In this document: positions 5,624 to 15,439 of the stretch, one piece after another
How positions within the stretch are numbered: position 1 is the first letter of the stretch
How the letters are laid out: every line of letters starts with the position of its first letter
DNA from: Lepidodermella squamata
Taxonomy: Eukaryota; Animalia; Gastrotricha
Direction of reading: 5' to 3'
Assembly: GCA_047495785.1 (NCBI GenBank)
Contig: JBLDXI010000017.1
Location: forward strand, 3,162,001 to 3,226,000
Length of the DNA stretch: 64,000 nucleotides
Notes under the pieces: generated by a model
Seen by the model: the letters and a program-made list of their open reading frames with translations, nothing else
What the model was told of the DNA's origin: nothing
Database searches by the model: none
Translations under genes and position numbers: made by a program

Positions 5624-8555
5624 ATGGAACCTCTCTCTCCCGTCAGTTTTGGCGAATCTAGTGGCGGAGTCGCCTCTTCCACTAAGGCAACTCCGAAATC
5701 AGTCGATGATCGTCCCAAGGCGCGCTCAGCTAGAAGGAACGGTGGTAGAACGCCTTTATCTTCTGTTAACAGCACACCATCCAGGAATCGAGGTGCCAGT
5801 CCAGCTGTTGTATTTGGCAGTCAGCCGGGAACCCCTGCTACTCCAGGAGGCGGACTGCGTTCCCGTCCAGACCTTGGAACTCCCTCTCATGGACTGCGCC
5901 AGGTTCAGGTAGGCTTTATCATGGTAATGTACTCGTAAAATGATCTATCATGCGAATTATAGCTTACTAGTGATTTGGGCGGCACAGATCACTTTGCTGA
6001 AACTAGCGAGGGTGATAATGCTTTCAAGCTAGTGGTATGGGGCAGTGATGTTTCAGCTGAGCGTTGCCGTCGCCAATTCTCCCGGTTTTTACGATCTTAC
6101 GTGCCACCAGCCGTTGACCATGACGAAGCAATTACCCATCAGGAGACTTCAGCCTTGGCTGACTCTTGGGAACCTACCCGGCCTTATTATTTGCGAAAGT
6201 TGCGTGAAGTTTCCGAAGCTAAGGATAAGCCGATTCTGGAGATCAACTGCTCTTTCTTGAAGAACTTTGACGCTCAGCTCTACCGTCAAATGATCATGTT
6301 CCCATCTGAAGTCATCGGCTTCTTGGATGATGCAGCGAATGAGGTTTGTCTATTGCCTTGCAATAAATTGCCCACATCTCGATGAATTCTAGGTGTTTTC
6401 GATTGAATTTCCCGATGTTCAACTCAATCGTCCCATCGAGACCAGACCCTATTTGCCGGCGGACTCTGAGTCAGCTCGAGCTCTTCGTCATCTTGGCCCT
6501 TCAGATGTTGACCAGCTGGTCGTCGTTCGTGGAATGGTCATTAGATTGTCCCCAGTAATTCCAGAAATGCGTTCCGCTTTTTTCCGTTGCTCAATCTGTT
6601 CCAACTCTGTAACAATGGATGTTGACCACGGCAATGTGTCTGAACCCCGGTTGTGCACTAACTGCAACTCGAAGCATTCATTCACTATCATTCACAATCT
6701 GTGCACTTTCTTCGACAAGCAACTCATTCGTCTACAGGTTGCCATTTACAATTCAGTTTCTCCTCTTCTCTAAGTATTTATTTTCAGGAAAGCCCTGATG
6801 ACACGCCTCCCGGCCGCACACCTCACGCTCTTTCGCTGTTTGTCAACGGTGATTTGGTCGATGCAGTCCAACCTGGTGATCGCGTTGCTGTAACTGGTAT
6901 CTACCGTACACAGCCTGTACGCGTCAATGCTCGCATGCAAACACTGAGGGCCGTTTATCGCACCCACATCGACGTCCTGCATTTCCGTCGCGATATTGCT
7001 GGCCGCCTCCCATCATCAAAGCTAACTGAATCAGATGCAAATAGCGGTAACGGAATATGCCCGTCCGGAGCTGATGCAAACGATTTCGTCACTGAATGGG
7101 CTAATCGTCTGTCTCCTGATCGCGTTGCCGAGATGAAGAAGCTGTCAGAGGCCCCTGATGTTTACGAGCGCTTAGCTCACGCCCTTGCTCCCAGTGTTTA
7201 CGAACATGAGGATATTAAGAAGGGTCTGCTTTTGCAGTTGATGGCAGGTGTCCGCAAGGATTTGTCCGGCGTTGGCCGTGGCTTTTCGCGCGCCGATATT
7301 CACGTGATTTTATGTGGAGACCCCGGTACCAGCAAGTCGCAACTTCTGCAGTACGTCCACCGCCTGGCCCCACGCAGTCAATACACCGCTGGTCGCGGCT
7401 CATCCGCCGTCGGTTTGACCGCGTTCATCGCTCGTGAGCCTGACACCCGTCAAACTGTGCTGCAACCCGGAGCCTTGGTCCTTTCCGACCGCGGCGTTTG
7501 CTGCATTGACGAATTCGACAAGATGTCCGAAGCCGCCCGCACCATTCTCCACGAAGTTATGGAACAGCAAACGCTGTCAGTCGCCAAGGCTGGTATCGTT
7601 TGCCAACTCAATGCCCGCGCCGCTGTTCTAGCCGCTTGTAACCCGGTGTCTTCGCGATGGGACCGCACCAAGTCAATCATCGACAACATCCGCATGCCTC
7701 CGACCCTTCTGTCGCGCTTCGACTTGGTATTTTTGATGATCGATCCTCAGGATGAAGTTTTCGACCGCCGTCTCGCCCGCCATTTGATCTCTCTTTTCGG
7801 CCCGGCGCCGAACACAACCCGCGAGCACCAGCTTCACCAAGACGAGAACGAGACCGGCACGGTTAGCATGGACGATTTCGCTCGTTCGTCGGCCTCTCAG
7901 CCTATCGGAGCTAACCAATCCGTGGTCGACAACGACCTCTTGCGTGACTACATCGCCTACGCCAAGGCCAAGTTCGACCCTCTCATCAGCGAGCCTGCTC
8001 AACAGGCGCTGGTCGAAGCTTACGTTCGTATGCGTCAAGGACCTGGCACAGGCGGCCAGGTTGCTGCTTATCCGCGTCAACTGGAAGCGCTGATTCGTTT
8101 GGCCGAGGCTCATGCGCGTCTTCGTTGGTCGCCTTCAGTTGAAACTGTCGATGTTCAGGTTCGTTATTTTGAAGAATTATTTCAATTCGAAATTTAATGA
8201 ATTTTCTACAATTTAGGAGGCTCGTCGCTTGTACGGTGAGGCGTTGAAGCAAGCCGCGACTGACCCTTCGACTGGCAGAATCGATGTTGCCCTGCTAACC
8301 ACCGGATTCTCAGCCGCTGGTCGTAAACGCCGTGCGATGCTTCGCGAGGCAGTTAAGCGCCTGCTGACTGGAATGGGCTCGTCGAGTCGCGAAACCATTT
8401 TCCAGTACGAACCTGTCCTAAATCAACTGCGCGCCCAGTCCGATGTGGCTATCAGCTGGGAAATGTTCGAGGACGCTCTTCGCGATCTTGAGGATGAAGA
8501 TACCATCGCTCTTCCTGGCAACCGCACGATTCGTCTCCTGGTGGCTCGTGCTTGA
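5624..8555 (+). CDS. MCM4: DNA replication licensing factor MCM4 (multi-exon, ~50-nt introns)
   Basis: S/TP-rich N-terminus, VVWGSDV, zinc finger CSIC..CTNC, Walker A GDPGTSKS, Walker B IDEFDKM, arginine finger SRFD, AYPRQLE, and the MCM4-type [10 protein letters not shown] tail. Confidence 0.96.
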
Positions 8556-8855: not shown

Positions 8856-10258
8856 CTAGGAACTCATCAGAGTAGCATAGATAACGTCTCCTTTCCTCAA
8901 AAACCCCGGCCGATCGACTGCTGCGTCAACCCCGAAAATAGGCTGGCCACCGTATTCGTCCTGTTTCAATCGAAATCTAAATTAAAATTTAAGGAGGAGC
9001 GAGAATCGAAGGAACATCTGTCATACCTTTTCAAGGTTTTGAGCGGTTCGCCATCAGCTCGACGCGCGCCATTTCTAGCGTCGATTGTGGTAATACGACA
9101 GCGATCACAAGAGCGAAGGCTGCGAAGAATTGTTACATTAGGCGAGGGTATCACCGACCCATCTACAACCTCGAAATCTGATTCCGGACCGATATATATC
9201 CTGTCGAAATCGTCCTGTTGGAATTATTAAAATCTGTTCGAGCAAATTTAGAGTCAAGCGAACCTCGGAAAAGGCCTGGTGCGTTTGAATGAGAAGGTTG
9301 GGTCGGAAATTGCTTGCATCTACAGGCTCATCCCCAGGGTTGAGACGAGCGTTGAGATCTTCGATGGACGATGAGTTGATCAAATGTATCGGCGCAAATT
9401 CACTATAGCCGGTCTGCAATTATTTTTTTCGAGAAAACTTAAAAAAATTGAAGAATAGCCTACTTTGTCGAATTCGCGAATTCTGTGGGTCAATCGACGT
9501 GGGACTGTGACATTCGTCGTGACAGGTTTCATATGAGATGGGCTGTCGGCATGAATTAGAGCAACATCATCGCGATTGAGATAGGTTCGCCACCAATCGG
9601 CAGCTTCTTGTCCGCAGTGATGCCCAGAAACTATTTGCCCTCGTAACCTAAAATAAAAAACTGTCCTGGCTGAACCAATTATGAACTAATTTTAACCTGG
9701 CTTTGACGATAATGGGTGGTTCGGCTGTTACCGATGGGTGGTGAATTACTAGATCCGGCATGCCTGGTGCCGAGAAGCACAGAGTGAAGATGTTTTCAGC
9801 ATCCGAGCCGCTGCTCAGCAAAGAGGTTCGCCTCGGTTTAAGCATCATCCGTAACTGCACCAGGGACATTTTGGGACATTGGCGCTGCGTAATAACTTCT
9901 CCAAACATTATGAAAGACGGAGAAGTCGAAGTTGAGCTGTTTTCTTTCGCTGCGACTACAGCAAAATGTCTATATAAAAACCAGAATTTAACGCAAGTTT
10001 TCGCTACTCATTATAGCAAAACCTATCATTGATGTTGAAAGCCTGAAGACCTATGAAATCGCATACAGCGTTGTCGACCGATATTCCACCGCATGATTTT
10101 ATTGGGTAGATGAAAATTGACTCCAGCGTCCCAACTCTAGTAAGCTGGCGGGAAACTTTCCGAGAATATAGCTTTTGCATGAACAGCGCCATAACATTAC
10201 AGCCCGCAAAAAATGCAACAAGTTCGGCGAAAATTCGTGCATCTTCACCGTGAAGCAT
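8856..10258 (-). CDS. MOSC-domain / mitochondrial amidoxime-reducing component (mARC)-like protein, copy 1
   Basis: N-terminal hydrophobic anchor, IYPIKSCGG, ITQRQCPKM, NFRPNLLI, CDRC, EPLKTLKRY and PIFGVDA across ~50-nt introns. Confidence 0.9.
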
Positions 10259-10519
10259 TATGATAGATTTGATTTTAAAACCTGCGATATTGAAAAGGGT
10301 GTGGACTTCTGAGCGCTATCGATATATGTATCACACCAAGCGAAAAATTATCGCAAGGCACGCGATTGCTGCCCGGCGAGGATGACACGCGATTTTCGAT
10401 TCCGATTATCTCATGAGATTTCTTTTATTTCCCTCGAATCTACCATATAGAAATCTTAAATCTTAACTATATAAGACTCTTAAGTTGCCACGATACTGAC
10501 AGAGAATACACCAGCTTCC

Positions 10520-11860
10520 TTAAAAGTTCAAGAAAGTGGCATAAATCACATCTCCTGGGCGAATGGCCTTTCCAACGTGATCGACGGCTGCATCGACGCC
10601 AAAAATTGGCCAATTGGCATAATATTCACGACGCATTCGATAGCTGCATACAAAATTGCGAATTTCATTAACATAAATTTTTCAATTTTATTTACCGTTT
10701 CAGAGTGGCAATCGGCTCGCCATCAGCTCGCCGTTTACCCTCAACAGGGTTCACCGTCGGCAACAGACATCGATCATTCGGTCTGATTGTTCGGATCACA
10801 GTAACAGATGGCGAGGGCACGATTTCGCCATCGACAACTCTGAATTCGGATTCGGCTCCGATGTAAATTCGATCAAATTCATCCTTAAAAAGTTGATAAG
10901 CAAAGGATTATGCCGAGCCTGGCTCAAATGGAAAAAATTCACCTCGATATAAGGCCTCAAGGCTCTAATCAGAATACCAGGCCGGAAATTGGAGACAGTA
11001 ATCGGCGTATCAGATTCAATTCGTGAGTTTAAATCATCGATTGATGCAGAGTTAATAATGTGAAGTTGCGCCCAGTCATTGTAACCAGTCTGAAAAAATT
11101 GCAAAAAATCAACATTGAATTAGTCATAATTGATTAACCTTGACATTTTCACCGACGCGCTGACGCCATAAGCCAGGAACAGCTTCAGGCAATGGCAAAA
11201 CGTCTTTCAAGTGATCAGGGCTTTCAGCGTAAATCAAGACAACATCTTCGCGTTTGAGATAGGATCGCCACCATTTTGCAGCCTCTTCACCACAGTTACG
11301 ACCACGATAAGGCATGCCAAACAGTCTGAAATAAAAAGACAACAATTGACTTCACGGTTTGCAAAAAAGTTGTTGTTACTTGGCGTCTACGATGGCCAGT
11401 TCTTTATTAAGGGGGAGGCGGATCACTAAATCAGGCATATCAGGGGCCGAAAAACGCCATGCCGTGTTGCTGTCTTGATTTTCGAAATTGACCCCGACCA
11501 GTGCCATTTGAGGATATTGTCTTTGAGTCAAAATGATGCCAGGAGTCCCGTCCGAGGTCAGAGTTGCGACCGCGAAATGCCTGAAAATCACAATAGATTG
11601 AATTTTTTGATTGTTTATAGAAGCTACCGGTCGGTAATACTGCCGTGATGCATACCAGTGTCATCACAAGTAGCCTCGCTGACAGGTAGGCCGCGACACG
11701 ACTTTGCAGGGTAGATGAACAGAGATTCCACGCAGCCAACACGTGTTAATTTGCTTCGAACCCGGCGGGAACAGGTCCGCATCAGGTAGGCCATGACGTT
11801 TGAGCCGGCGAAGTGAAAAGCCAAGCCAGCCATAGTCGACGCATTGTTATCAGAAAACAT
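10520..11860 (-). CDS. MOSC-domain / mARC-like protein, copy 2 (tandem paralogue)
   Basis: IYPAKSCRG, LTQRQYPQM, NFRPGILI, NDRC and PIFGVDA. Exon layout parallels copy 1. Confidence 0.9.
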
Positions 11861-12305
11861 GACTATTCAATCGAAAAATCCTTAGTTTTAATGGTCGAAA
11901 AGTCAAGAAAACAGTTTTTAGGGCGGCCTTTGTTAGGTTGCCTATAGTTTTCCGAATAGCCAATGACCAGGGCTTAACGGCTGCGGTAAAATAGCCTGGT
12001 TGCGTGGGTGACATATTAGATAGACCGGCTAATTTGTGGCCTCGGAAAAAACGTACACAGTTGAACCAACGAAGCATTATCGCTGCGAAAATGTGATATG
12101 AAGGGATAGCGTAAATTCATCCGTAGGATTTCTAGACAGTGTTATTAATGCAAGAGTAATGTAACTGAGCTCGCCAAAAAAACAACACCGAGTTCGACCT
12201 TTTTATTTGAGTGCTGTCCGAAACACACGCTTTAGTGCTAAGTCATAATCTGTGATTTTCACTATCATCTCCTTGTTGTAAATAATAATTGGCACAACTT
12301 ATTGA

Positions 12306-13621
12306 ATGGCACACCGAAACAACCACAACAGCCATCAGAATGAAGGAGTTACCCTCGAGACTGATGCCTTCACGTGCAGCATTTGCTTGAATCGCCTGTC
12401 CAGAATCAAAATGTGCCCGCGGTGTTCGAAAATGTTCCACGCGGACTGTCTATCAAAGTGGCTCGAACGCAGGCAAACTTGCCCTAACTGCATCTCACCT
12501 CTGAAGCCGAATGAGGCCATTTTTTGCCGGTAAAATTCATTTTTTCGATGTTGTCAATTTCAGCATTGATGAAAATATCAGGTGGGGACAGGAAATCCTT
12601 CAACACTTTGAAGATCTCGAGACCAAGACGAGAACTATGGCCGAAGAACGCAATCAAATTGTCGAAATTCTTAAAAACGCTAAAGAGTACGTCGTTCTCT
12701 CGCGAATGATTGCTATTCAAAAATTTTCATTTTCAGGAAATATGCTTTTAAAGTAGTTATTATCGGCAATATGGCAGTTGGAAAGACTGCTTTGACCAGG
12801 CGATTTACCGTAAGAAATTCAATTCAAAATGTGAAATTCTGTGTCTTTTTATTTTTAAGGAAGATCAATTCAGCCTAACCTTCCCTTCAACGGCAGCTTT
12901 TGAATTCGTAATTTTTTTTTTTAAATTTTCGGATCAATAAAAACTTGAATTTTATCGAACAGGTACATCGACGAGTTGTCATAGGTTATGACATTATTCG
13001 ATTGATAATGGTCGACACGGCTGGGCAAGAACAGTTCGATGCGATAACTACATCGTTTTATCGCGACGCTGATTCAATTATCATTGCGTACGACGTCACA
13101 AACAGAGTAAAAGCGAACTACAAACATCTTGATATATAGCTTTTATCTTATTTTTGGACCTTTTAGGACTCTTTTGAGAAGGTGCGTCATTGGCATACCA
13201 AGGCAATGCTGCACTCTATGAAAACTCCTGTGATGCTCCTTGTAGCTACAAAAGCTGACCTTTCTAATCACCGAGTTGTGAGCACGGAGGAGGGGCTGGT
13301 TAGCTATTTTTCTCATCGTTTTTTATGGTGACATCTCTGATTTTTCATTAGCGTTTGGCGGAAAACTTAGGCATTCGATTTCTCGAAACTTCATCGCTGC
13401 ATCGGGTTAACATCGAGGAAACTTTTTACTCTGTCGCCGCGACTCTAAAAGCTCGCCTTGATCACGAAATGGAAGAGGACTTTCAACGCCGTCGGGCAAC
13501 TTCCAGCATCTCTTACCGGCTTCATTCAGAATCAGCCATCTCATTACAGGTTTTAAGCGGACAGGAAAATTCGAGACAGACTAAAGATAAGGATAAGAAA
13601 TGTCCATGTGTTATCATGTAA
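12306..13621 (+). CDS. RING finger (TRIM37-like) - short coiled coil - Rab-family GTPase fusion, ~331 aa, C-terminal CAAX
   Basis: Seven exons join in frame: 12306-12529, 12582-12686, 12737-12809, 12860-12907, 12963-13106, 13167-13298, 13352-13621. RING CSICL..CPRCSK..CPNC..CRW; G1 GNMAVGKT, G3 DTAGQE, G4 TKAD, G5 ETSS; ends in CPCVIM. Confidence 0.85.
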
Positions 13622-14141
13622 TTTTTTATCTTAAATTTCACTCTGTCTTTGATACTCTCTGCAGAATAAATTCGAGAAGTAAAATTACCATCTTTTATTC
13701 ATTACATAAAATTTCACCGTTCTTGTTATAACTCTCAAAATTGAGGAATAAGAAGTGTAATTAAAACAGGTATGTTTTGTAGTTGCGCAAAAAGAAGTCT
13801 TAGTTCAGCGTTTCGGAAGACATTATAATATAAGTTATACATGTATCAGCGCAATTATTCGGACAAAAGCATAACAATAAATGAATCTACCATGCTTTTG
13901 ATCGAAAATTCAGCGTTAAATAATCATTCTTCCTCTAAAAGTTGAGAAAAATATCGCAGCTTTTGCATTTTCAACAAATTAATATCGTTGTTGCGGCAGG
14001 CCTAGAAACGTCATGGCCGCGACTGAAGACACGGCATCAGTCAATAAATTGTAGCCTGCCGTCAATGTGATGATGCAAAGTTTTTATAAAAATATATTTT
14101 GCTGCCTATCGCCATTCGAGGAATTCAACGAAGCCTTGTTA

Positions 14142-15439
14142 TCATTCGGTATCGAAGCCGCACCGTTCACCGACGAGCCGTTTCTAAATTTCGCAGTAAT
14201 TAAAATAGTTAAAATAACAATTGTATATCAAACCTCGTCGAGCTCCTTCTTTGTTTCCTCTTCGATACGTCGAATGTCGTCTAACGTTAACCCATACCAA
14301 TTATCCATCCAACAAAATATTTGCCGGTGGAATAGAAAGAATATTCTCCTCTCAGCCTATATATGAAAAATACAATTCAGGCGAGACTGGATGCCTGCTG
14401 AAAGCTACAAACGTGTTGGATAAATTTTTCGATTCGATGTTGTAGTCCAAACCATTTGAACTCAGCTGTCACGAGTTTGTATGCGCACATCACAGGTTGA
14501 GTTGTTTCCTGCGTGGACGAAGTGTTAAAATAAAATAGAAGCTAAAAAAATAGCGACACATACCGCCCATTTTCCAACTAGTGGGCCGCGACCAGTCTTC
14601 TCAGATTTAAATTTTTGAGGGTCTTGGTCTTCGCGATAATCCTAAAAAAAACTGCATTGAAGCCAAAGCCGCGGTAATTGGTTTCACTCTTACACTGTGG
14701 CGAACTTCGTCGTTGGCAATGTCGATAGTTATCACTTCACGCTTGGCAAGCAGCTCTGGAGGTAGGTTGTGAGCCTGGTTGGTCCAAAAATTAAACTTCC
14801 TGATTTGATGCAAAGGTATGAAGCTTACATTTTCAGTTGTCCCACGGTCGGGTAAGTGAAGAGATTCAATTTTCATCATGAAGTTCTCCTTCATGTAACC
14901 GGGGTTCTAGAATAAAGGATAATATTGGTGAAAATATTATATGGGCTGAAATGTTTGTTTACCGTTACGACAGTTCGGCAGTAGGGATATACGTTCCATC
15001 CTTCTTCGTGAACTTCCATGGAGCCCTTTGGCATGAAAAACCTCAGGATGGCAGGAATTCGACTATAACATTTGAAAAATCATTAGCTTATTATTCCAAT
15101 GATCAGGAAAGTTGTGTGAACCTTTTCAAATGATATATCTTGTAAGTATGTTGGCCCGAGTCGTAGTTTTGAAAGATGGGAGTATTGGTGAATGGCTCGT
15201 TTGTCACTATTTCGATGCCTTCGCCACCGCCTGTGTGCTGTTTACTGGACTCAGCTAGCGACCATAGCTGACCGATTCGGTACTGAAATGCAGAAATAAA
15301 TTTAAAAAAAAACTGGCAACCTGCACAAAAAAATCACCTCTTCGACAGACATGGGCATAATGATTCGGCTGAAAATCATGGCGTAAGTTATATATTTTAT
15401 TGAAGGGCGACTCTTAACTTACAATTCTTTGATAATCAT
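14142..15439 (-). CDS. Phosphatidylinositol transfer protein, class I (PITP alpha/beta-like)
   Basis: Starts MIIKE; [22 protein letters not shown]-like segment, [49 protein letters not shown]. Confidence 0.92.

What the first reader, a model, noticed from the sequence alone, without database searches (positions are those of the whole stretch)
12306..13621. TRIM37-type RING domain fused in frame to a Rab GTPase
Seen: exon 1 encodes FTCSICLNRLSRIKMCPRCSKMFHADCLSKWLERRQTCPNCISPL...FCRW, closely following the TRIM37 RING pattern. Canonical 52-nt and 50-nt introns (12530-12581, 12687-12736) join it through a short helix directly to KYAFKVVIIGNMAVGKT, with no stop and no room for a separate promoter. 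Known: TRIM23 joins RING to ARF, Rab40 has a SOCS box, and Rab44/45/46 have EF-hand/coiled-coil extensions. I know of no characterised animal RING-Rab fusion. Inference: a membrane-anchored, nucleotide-switchable E3 ubiquitin ligase.
Basis: partly seen in the sequence, partly recalled or inferred. Interest (0 to 1): 0.85.

Follow-up and report, generated by a model that had tools for sequence, protein, structure and literature searches.

The report
Expressed RING finger–Rab GTPase fusion gene
An unidentified invertebrate has a real, transcribed and selectively constrained gene that joins a TRIM37-type ubiquitin-ligase RING finger to a Rab-like GTPase with a lipid-anchor tail. I found this combination neither in the searchable literature nor among the nearest RING relatives in a 1.8-billion-protein library.

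Summary
Seven exons on the + strand (12306-13621) give one 331-aa reading frame: a RING finger, a roughly 35-residue helix, a Rab-like GTPase and a tail ending KDKDKKCPCVIM.

- **Transcript:** cDNA contigs of a public run carry all six GT..AG junctions, including the two that join the RING exon to the GTPase exons. They also show a 5' end at 12138 and poly(A) at 13684.
- **Selection:** all 9 exonic variants seen in other runs are synonymous, 7 in the RING exon and 2 in a Rab exon.
- **RING:** it is of the TRIM37 type. TRIM37 is the best solved-structure match, and alignment with TRIM37 orthologues is gap-free through the post-RING "CRW" helix.
- **GTPase:** every exon matches Rabs best, with no single subfamily. 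G1-G5 motifs are intact, RabF motifs are partly degenerate, and the end is a CAAX box rather than CC/CXC.
- **Relatives:** none of the 150 nearest RING relatives among 1.84 billion representatives contains a Ras/Rab domain. No held paper describes a RING-Rab fusion.

Ubiquitin-ligase activity, GTP switching and membrane anchoring are inferred from motifs only. The spliced protein has no tool reference, so I could not run full-length homology, architecture or structure searches. Its range in other species is therefore unknown. The scan has noted other GTPase fusions in this genome, but not this one.

The parts
12138..12305 (+). 5' UTR. The cDNA 5' end is at 12138. There are two tiny uORFs (12148, 12159) and an in-frame TGA at 12303-12305 directly before the start codon.
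   Evidence: a template-switch oligo is the loose end before 12138, and an X1 contig runs colinear over 12138-12317; uATG scan.
12306..12529 (+). Exon 1: start codon, a His/Asn-rich N-terminus, the RING finger and the start of the post-RING helix (..FCR|W).
   Evidence: zf-RING_2, E 3.7e-10; TRIM37 RING is the best PDB hit.
12375..12491 (+). RING core, residues 24-62. Zinc ligands are C24, C27, C37, C40, H45, C48, C59 and C62. The spacing is TRIM37-like (C-x2-C-x9-C-x2-C-x4-H-x2-C-x10-C-x2-C).
12530..12581 (+). Intron 1, 52 nt, GT..AG.
   Evidence: The cDNA joint 12528/12581 (cut +1) is.
12582..12686 (+). Exon 2: linker helix, residues about 75-110. Its first half still resembles the TRIM37 segment between the RING and the B-box.
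12687..12736 (+). Intron 2, 50 nt, GT..AG. This is the junction that fuses the RING/helix part to the GTPase.
   Evidence: joint 12686/12737 in an X1 cDNA contig, depth 78.1.
12737..12809 (+). Exon 3: beta-1 strand and P-loop, G120-NMAVGK-T127.
   Evidence: Ras profile positions 1-20; the best PDB hits are Rab30, Thorarchaeota Rab, Rab25, Rab14 and Rab11.
12860..12907 (+). Exon 4: switch I region (..TFPST145AAFEF). RabF1 is degenerate.
   Evidence: joints 12809/12860 and 12907/12963.
12963..13106 (+). Exon 5: beta-2 and beta-3 strands and switch II, D168-TAGQ172-E, plus RabF3-5-like segments.
   Evidence: Ras, E 4.6e-11; the best PDB hits are Rab23, Rab1, Rab26 and Rab43.
13167..13298 (+). Exon 6: G4 motif T226-KAD229.
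   Evidence: Ras, E 5.7e-7; the Rab3 family is best.
13352..13621 (+). Exon 7: G5 motif E254-TSS, a roughly 60-residue hypervariable tail, the patch KDKDKK, C326-P-C328-VIM and the stop codon.
   Evidence: (Rab8A and Rab1 are best).
13622..13684 (+). 3' UTR, with AATAAA at 13665-13670 and a poly(A) site at 13684. A second poly(A) site at 13793 follows ATTAAA at 13760.
   Evidence: poly(A) loose ends.

Best explanation
This is a genuine single gene whose mRNA encodes a 331-aa chimeric protein. Its parts, in order, are an N-terminal TRIM37-type RING finger, a roughly 35-residue helix, a Rab-family GTPase with intact nucleotide-binding and catalytic motifs, and a serine-rich tail ending in a lysine-rich patch and the CAAX box CVIM, with a second cysteine two residues upstream. 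Shown: the gene structure, the cis-spliced transcript, the 5' and 3' ends, purifying selection on both halves, and the family identity of both domains. Inferred: the tail is prenylated (X = Met points to farnesyltransferase, so no Rab escort protein is needed) and holds the protein on a membrane. The GTPase cycles between GDP and GTP. The RING recruits a ubiquitin-charged E2, so that ubiquitination of nearby membrane proteins, or of the GTPase itself, is tied to the nucleotide state. The helix after the RING, which in TRIM proteins helps RING dimerisation, would let molecules concentrated on a membrane pair their RINGs and become active. The N-terminal module most likely arose by capture of the 5' part of a TRIM37-like gene (RING plus the pre-B-box helix) in front of a Rab gene.
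For: - **Gene model:** it closes with no stops and six GT..AG introns of 50-60 nt.
- **Domains:** RING and Ras profile hits are colinear.
- **Transcript:** run X1 is cDNA. It shows a template-switch oligo at 12138 and poly(A) at 13684 and 13793. All six joints have the same depth (78.1) and side lengths equal to the exon lengths, which fits one 854-nt contig reaching from about 12408 in the RING exon to 13581. Run X3, from another study, shows the last two joints.
- **No separate Rab start:** no loose end of spliced-leader type was reported at 12737. The first in-frame Met downstream of exon 2 lies inside the P-loop.
- **Selection:** 9 of 9 exonic variants in X1/X2 contigs are synonymous third-position changes, while UTR and intron variants include indels.
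- **RING type:** TRIM37 RING is the best PDB match, and the alignment with TRIM37 orthologues is gap-free, including the CRW motif.
- **GTPase type:** all GTPase exons hit Rabs first.
- **Motifs:** GxxxxGKT, switch-I Thr, DTAGQ, TKAD, ETSS and eight zinc ligands can be read directly from the translation.
Against: - No biochemical or localisation evidence exists.
- The residue after the last RING cysteine is Ile, where TRIM37 and many active RINGs have Arg or Lys, so E2 activation may be weak.
- RabF1 and RabF2 are degenerate (AAFEF, RLIMV), and the G4 Asn is Thr.
- No orthologue was found, so conservation beyond this species or strain group is unknown. The organism's own proteins are absent from the protein collections.
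- No single contig spans from the 5' end to the poly(A) site. Contigs also cannot exclude minor isoforms.
Confidence: 0.6

Rival explanations
1. The fusion gene is real, but the RING is not a ligase. It would serve as a zinc-stabilised dimerisation or protein-binding module on an otherwise atypical Rab/Ras-like switch, comparable to the non-catalytic N-terminal extensions of large Rabs.
For: The linchpin position after C62 is Ile rather than Arg or Lys. The fifth ligand is His, where TRIM37 has Cys. No substrate-binding domain is present apart from the GTPase.
Against: All eight zinc ligands are kept, as are the E2-contact type residues (Ile26 between C24 and C27, Trp51, Pro60), as read. Seven of seven variants in the RING exon are synonymous, which shows constraint on the RING but not on catalysis as such.
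Confidence: 0.25
2. It is a young chimeric gene, or a read-through product made by exon shuffling, that is transcribed but has no selected function.
For: No orthologue was found in any collection. First readers noted several other GTPase fusions in the same genome, which suggests frequent domain shuffling.
Against: Nine of nine exonic variants are synonymous, against indels and substitutions in the UTR and introns. The frame is intact, all catalytic motifs are present, and the transcript has clean splice sites and a poly(A) signal.
Confidence: 0.07
3. There are two separate products: a small RING protein and a Rab made from its own mRNA by trans-splicing or an internal start at exon 3. The fused form would be a minor or assembly-derived species.
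For: The acceptor at 12736/12737 (ttttcag|G) looks like a generic acceptor. Contigs drop rare variants, so minor isoforms cannot be excluded.
Against: The assembled cDNA carries the 12686/12737 joint with exon-length sides. No foreign leader is listed as a loose end at 12737. Exon 3 offers no in-frame ATG before the P-loop, and exon 2 has no stop in frame. Intron 2 is only 50 nt.
Confidence: 0.04

Closest known systems
TRIM37 (MUL protein), RING domain, PDB 3lrq
   Same: It is the best solved-structure sequence match. The ligand spacing is the same, as are the CP-x-CSK motif, the WL..R..CP.C motif and the CRW-helix after the RING. Identity to TRIM37 orthologues is 44-49% over residues 21-75, without gaps.
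   Different: There is no B-box, no long coiled coil and no MATH/TRAF domain. The fifth zinc ligand is His, not Cys. The residue after the last Cys is Ile, not Arg. The helix runs straight into a GTPase.
TRIM23 / ARD1 (RING-B-box-coiled coil-ARF)
   Same: It is a RING E3 module and a Ras-superfamily GTPase in one polypeptide, with the RING N-terminal and the GTPase C-terminal. The abstract of PMC12075517 calls TRIM23 a unique TRIM protein with both E3 ligase and GTPase activity.
   Different: The GTPase here belongs to the Rab family, not ARF. There are no B-boxes. The membrane anchor is a C-terminal CAAX box rather than an ARF-type N-terminal helix. The RING is TRIM37-like, so this looks like an independent fusion.
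Rab40 (Rab with C-terminal SOCS box, substrate receptor of Cullin-5 ligase)
   Same: It is a Rab-family GTPase physically coupled to ubiquitin-ligase machinery (established knowledge).
   Different: Rab40 recruits a RING (Rbx2) indirectly through SOCS, Elongin B/C and Cul5. Here the RING is in the same chain, at the N-terminus, and Pfam found no SOCS box in the tail.
Large Rab GTPases Rab44, Rab45/RASEF, Rab46/CRACR2A
   Same: They have N-terminal extra domains plus a coiled coil in front of a C-terminal Rab domain (PMC8303950, PMC7645795).
   Different: Their extensions are EF-hands and long coiled coils. No EF-hand is present here, and the added domain is a RING.
K-Ras4B-type membrane anchor, and the CAAX-ending Rabs (Rab8, Rab13, Rab18, Rab23)
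   Same: The tail ends in a lysine-rich patch followed by CVIM, the same CAAX box as K-Ras4B (established knowledge). Some Rabs also end in CAAX rather than CC/CXC. Rab8A and Rab23 are among the best exon matches.
   Different: The patch is mixed in charge (KDKDKK). A second Cys lies two residues upstream (CPCVIM). Which prenyltransferase acts on it is untested.

Membership tests
RING-type E3 ligase domain | Cross-brace set of eight Cys/His zinc ligands with RING spacing, and a profile match | tested here: met
   zf-RING_2 at E 3.7e-10, above the gathering score. Ligands are C24, C27, C37, C40, H45, C48, C59 and C62.
RING-type E3 ligase domain | E2-dependent ubiquitin transfer | not testable with these tools
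   This needs biochemistry. The linchpin position is Ile, so activity is uncertain.
TRIM family (TRIM37 in particular) | Tripartite motif: RING followed by a B-box and a coiled coil (plus a MATH domain in TRIM37) | tested here: not met
   Pfam finds no B-box or MATH domain. In the alignment TRIM37 orthologues go on to a Cys/His B-box, whereas this protein goes on to the P-loop. Only the RING and the following helix are TRIM37-like.
Rab family of small GTPases | G1-G5 nucleotide-binding motifs of the Ras superfamily | tested here: met
   GNMAVGKT, T145, DTAGQE, TKAD and ETSS are read. Ras profile hits are colinear.
Rab family of small GTPases | Closer to Rabs than to Ras, Rho, Arf or Ran | tested here: met
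   For each of four exons the best PDB sequence hits are Rabs. Ral and K-Ras appear only lower down, and only for exon 7.
Rab family of small GTPases | RabF1-F5 motifs (IGVDF, KLQIW, RFrsiT, YYRGA, LVYDIT; Pereira-Leal and Seabra, from memory) | tested here: inconclusive
   The motifs read AAFEF, RLIMV, QFDAIT, FYRDA and IAYDVT. F3-F5 are recognisable; F1 and F2 are degenerate.
Rab family of small GTPases | C-terminal CC/CXC double-cysteine geranylgeranylation motif | tested here: not met
   The protein ends CPCVIM. That is a CAAX box with an extra upstream Cys, as in the minority of CAAX-ending Rabs.
Rab family of small GTPases | Placement inside the Rab clade in a phylogeny, and assignment to a subfamily | not tested
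   No reference set could be fetched, because the spliced protein has no tool reference. Different exons favour different subfamilies, so it is treated as an orphan Rab-like protein.
TRIM23/ARD1 | C-terminal ARF domain and B-boxes | tested here: not met
   The GTPase exons match Rabs, not ARFs, and there is no B-box.
Rab40 | SOCS box after the GTPase domain | tested here: not met
   Exon 7, including the tail, hits only Ras in Pfam at E up to 1.

The most novel reading that the evidence does not exclude
The protein is a self-contained, lipid-anchored ubiquitin ligase gated by GTP. The Rab-like domain's nucleotide state would control RING pairing or E2 engagement through the connecting helix, so that a Rab marks its membrane neighbourhood directly with ubiquitin, without separate effectors. 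This would be a second, independent invention of the TRIM23 principle, this time on a Rab scaffold.
Probability: 0.3. Interest if true: 0.75.

Novelty: new variant of a known kind. Interest (0 to 1): 0.55.

Why it matters
Rab GTPases normally act through separate effector proteins. The known links between Rabs and ubiquitination are indirect (Rab40 through Cullin-5), and the only well-studied RING-small GTPase fusion is TRIM23, which uses an ARF domain.

A natural, compact 331-aa RING-Rab protein would be a simple system for asking whether a small GTPase switch can gate an E3 ligase within one chain. It would also be a ready-made template for engineered switchable ligases. In addition, it shows a clean case of domain capture: the RING and first helix of a TRIM37-like gene placed in front of a Rab.

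Its weight is limited for two reasons. It is so far a single gene in one poorly sampled animal lineage, and the function is only inferred.

Tried and rejected
- **RING-side search.** I searched exon 1 against 1.84 billion representatives, which gave 2414 hits at E up to 1e-3. A local phmmer of the Rab part against the best 150 found nothing at E < 10, and no P-loop or DTAG motif. There was also no close orthologue of the RING.
- **Rab-side searches.** Exon 7 and exon 5 were used as queries in the search for homologous proteins and nothing was found. These blanks mean little, because the tool only sees proteins of 0.55-1.75 times the query length.
- **Metagenome scans.** Exon 1 found no relative. 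Exon 5 found only generic, intron-less Rabs (L001-L005, at most 36% identity to residues 114-271).
- **Staggered alignment.** I tried to build an alignment of the exon pieces on an intron-less Rab scaffold (L001:3851-4414) to obtain a searchable profile. MAFFT misplaced the pieces, so I dropped it.
- **Synteny route.** The MCM4 exon ORF found one relative at 85% identity (P0151, metagenome contig L006). Its flanks differ and hold no RING-Rab. All named animals are at 58% identity or less, so the organism itself is not in the protein collection.
- **Short RING hits.** The contigs of P0081 and P0063 are too short to show any neighbour.
- **ESM Atlas.** A search with exon 1 returned only generic RING clusters.
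- **Literature.** No paper holds 'RING-Rab' or similar compounds, or the three phrases 'Rab domain', 'RING domain' and 'N-terminal' together. Papers with 'Rab GTPase domain' and 'RING' concern other things.
- **Paralogues.** There is none elsewhere in the window.
- **Left out.** The spliced 331-aa sequence has no reference and must not be typed. I therefore did not run a full-length homology search, a domain-architecture search, an AlphaFold model or a fold search.

Full report
**Observation**

The sequence at 12306-13621 reads as the first-stage reader said. Splicing seven + strand exons gives 996 nt with no internal stop and a 331-aa protein. The exons are 12306-12529, 12582-12686, 12737-12809, 12860-12907, 12963-13106, 13167-13298 and 13352-13621. 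All six introns are 50-60 nt and GT..AG.

Pfam finds zf-RING_2 in exon 1 (E 3.7e-10, residues 23-62). Exons 3, 5, 6 and 7 give colinear pieces of the Ras family profile PF00071, at profile positions 1-20, 40-84, 85-127 and 130-160. The 16-residue exon 4 fills the gap between them. The window holds no second copy.

**Transcript evidence**

Three public runs hold the stretch, and I laid all three on 11000-15000.

- **X2** behaves as genomic DNA: its contigs are unspliced.
- **X1** is cDNA. One contig has the template-switch oligo sequence as a loose end directly before 12138. Two contigs end in poly(A), after 13684 and after 13793.
- **Joints in X1:** it shows six joints of GT..AG type: 12528/12581 (equivalent to 12529/12582), 12686/12737, 12809/12860, 12907/12963, 13106/13167 and 13297/13351.

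All six joints carry the same contig depth (78.1). Their 'side' lengths (106, 73, 48, 48, 131, 131) equal the lengths of the neighbouring exons. The output prints only three pieces of the 854-nt record 3 (13581 back to 12963). The remaining 348 letters fit exons 4, 3 and 2 plus about 122 nt of exon 1. I therefore infer that one contig runs from about 12408, inside the RING, to 13581.

Further X1 contigs cover 12138-12317 and the stretch between. Run X3, from another study, has the last two joints.

No foreign leader was listed as a loose end at 12737. Exon 3 has no in-frame ATG before the P-loop (the first is Met122, inside GNMAVGKT), and exon 2 has no stop. An in-frame TGA lies directly before the ATG at 12306, and the 5' UTR holds only two tiny uORFs. 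AATAAA at 13665-13670 precedes the poly(A) site at 13684.

The RING and Rab parts are therefore joined by ordinary cis-splicing in the assembled mRNA. Contigs cannot exclude minor isoforms.

**Selection**

The contigs of X1 and X2 differ from the window at nine exonic places, seven in the RING exon and two in exon 5. All nine are third-position synonymous changes. Variants in the 5' UTR and intron 4 include indels.

If roughly a quarter of random coding changes are synonymous, nine of nine has a chance of about 1e-5 to 1e-6. That figure is my own estimate. Both halves are thus under purifying selection as protein-coding sequence in this frame.

**Identity of the parts**

*The RING.* The best solved-structure sequence match of exon 1 is the TRIM37 RING, 3lrq (E 1.9e-12, 50 bits; the next, EL5, scores 35 bits). 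Part of that score is the His-tag aligning with the His/Asn-rich N-terminus.

Among the representative-library hits are TRIM37 orthologues (for example P0147 of 1024 aa, P0146 and P0132). They align without gaps to residues 21-90, with 24-27 of 55 identical over residues 21-75. The shared features are:

- the C-x2-C-x9-C-P-x-C-S-K spacing;
- the WL..R..CP.C motif;
- the 'CRW' and acidic helix after the RING.

After that, TRIM37 proteins continue into a B-box, whereas this protein continues its helix into the P-loop. There are two departures from TRIM37. The fifth ligand is His (FHADC, as in RING-H2 fingers), and the residue after the last Cys is Ile, not Arg.

*The GTPase.* Each exon has Rabs as its best PDB matches:

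| Exon | Best matches |
|---|---|
| 3 | Rab30, Rab25, Rab14, Rab11 |
| 5 | Rab23, Rab1, Rab26, Rab43 |
| 6 | Rab3 |
| 7 | Rab8A, Rab1 |

It is therefore Rab-family, with no clear subfamily. The G motifs are intact: GNMAVGKT, T145, DTAGQ172E, T226-KAD and ETSS. RabF3-F5 are recognisable, while RabF1 and RabF2 are degenerate.

*The tail.* It ends KDKDKK-C326-P-C328-VIM. This is a CAAX box identical to that of K-Ras4B, with an extra cysteine, and it is not the usual Rab CC/CXC ending.

**Search for relatives and prior description**

A full HMMER pass of exon 1 over 1.84 billion representative proteins gave 2414 hits at E up to 1e-3. None of the best 150, which reach down to 43 bits (the level of true TRIM37s), has any match to the Rab part or a P-loop. 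None is a close orthologue either.

Searches from the Rab side were blocked by the length window of the word-indexed tool. Metagenome scans gave only generic Rabs.

The neighbouring MCM4 exon ORF finds one metagenome contig at 85% identity, with different flanks, and all named animals at 58% or less. The source organism, an invertebrate of a poorly sampled lineage, is therefore itself absent from the protein collections. Absence of close orthologues means little. Absence of a TRIM37-type RING joined to a Rab in annotated proteomes is more meaningful.

In the held literature I found no description of a RING-Rab fusion. The abstract of PMC12075517 calls TRIM23 a unique TRIM protein with both E3 ligase and GTPase activity. 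Large Rabs are described with EF-hand and coiled-coil extensions (PMC8303950, PMC7645795).

**How it most likely works**

The following are shown: the architecture, the transcript, the selective constraint and the motifs. The rest is inferred.

- **Anchoring.** The CAAX box (X = Met) should be farnesylated, helped by the lysines and possibly by a second lipid on C326. This would anchor the protein to a membrane independently of Rab escort protein, which fits the degenerate RabF1/F2 surface.
- **GTPase.** It has everything needed to bind and hydrolyse GTP.
- **RING.** It has all eight ligands and the usual E2-contact type residues (Ile26, Trp51, Pro60). It lacks a basic linchpin, so activity may need pairing.
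- **Coupling.** The post-RING helix, kept from TRIM37, is the kind of element that pairs RINGs in TRIM proteins. Clustering of the GTP form on a membrane could therefore switch the ligase on towards neighbours or towards itself, as TRIM23 does with its ARF domain.

My confidence that the gene and the fused protein are real is above 0.9. My confidence that it acts as a GTPase-coupled ligase is about 0.4-0.5.

**Comparison with known families**

It is not a TRIM protein: the B-box, coiled coil and MATH domain are absent. It is not TRIM23, because the GTPase is a Rab and not an ARF. It is not Rab40, because there is no SOCS box, and it is not a large EF-hand Rab. It works most like TRIM23 in principle and like Rab40 in theme. 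I rate it a new variant of a known kind (multidomain Rab, or GTPase-linked RING ligase).

**Context**

The gene sits between two tandem MOSC-domain genes on the - strand and a phosphatidylinositol-transfer-protein gene, also on the - strand and convergent with it. The nearer MOSC gene is divergent from it, with its start at 11860. First-stage notes on the same genome list other Rab fusions and GIMAP-RING pairs. I did not test these. They suggest that GTPase domain shuffling is common in this animal.

**Limits**

I therefore left out the full-length homology, architecture and structure steps.

Noticed in passing
window 13680-14081: X1 cDNA depth jumps to 110-364 just downstream of the gene. A second + strand poly(A) end lies at 13793, after ATTAAA at 13760. 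An X1 contig over 13758-14009 carries an 11-nt insertion after 13803. This could be a longer 3' UTR isoform or a separate abundant short transcript; I did not resolve which.
   Followed up: partly
window 9141-11860, - strand: Two tandem MOSC-domain (mARC-like) genes, each with a MOSC_N exon and a MOSC exon. CT..AC introns of the nearer copy are supported by cDNA. That copy starts at 11860, about 280 nt from the RING-Rab 5' end and divergent from it, so the two may share a promoter region.
   Followed up: partly
window 6701-8555, + strand; locus L006: MCM4 gene. Its nearest protein in 5.8 billion sequences is 85% identical, on an 8.6-kb ENA metagenome contig with different neighbours (a ligand-gated channel and a NIPA transporter). 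All named animals are at 58% or less, so the source is an animal lineage without an annotated proteome in these collections.
   Followed up: partly
window 13896-15000, - strand: A spliced gene with CT..AC introns at 14184-14233, 14641-14692, 14774-14827 and 14907-14962. One exon matches the phosphatidylinositol transfer protein family (IP_trans, E 6e-9). It is convergent with the RING-Rab gene.
   Followed up: partly
window 11690-11774 and 14208-14291: In the genomic run X2, clusters of variants appear at about half the depth (for example 55 of 117). This fits two diverged haplotypes or gene copies in the sequenced material.
   Followed up: no
locus L001 3851-4417 (metagenome contig Ga0206129_10000859) and L002: An intron-less 188-aa Rab-like gene ending in CCT, with two further Rab-like matches nearby on the same contig (about 5680-6640). 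It may come from a giant virus or a protist. I used it only as a scaffold attempt.
   Followed up: no
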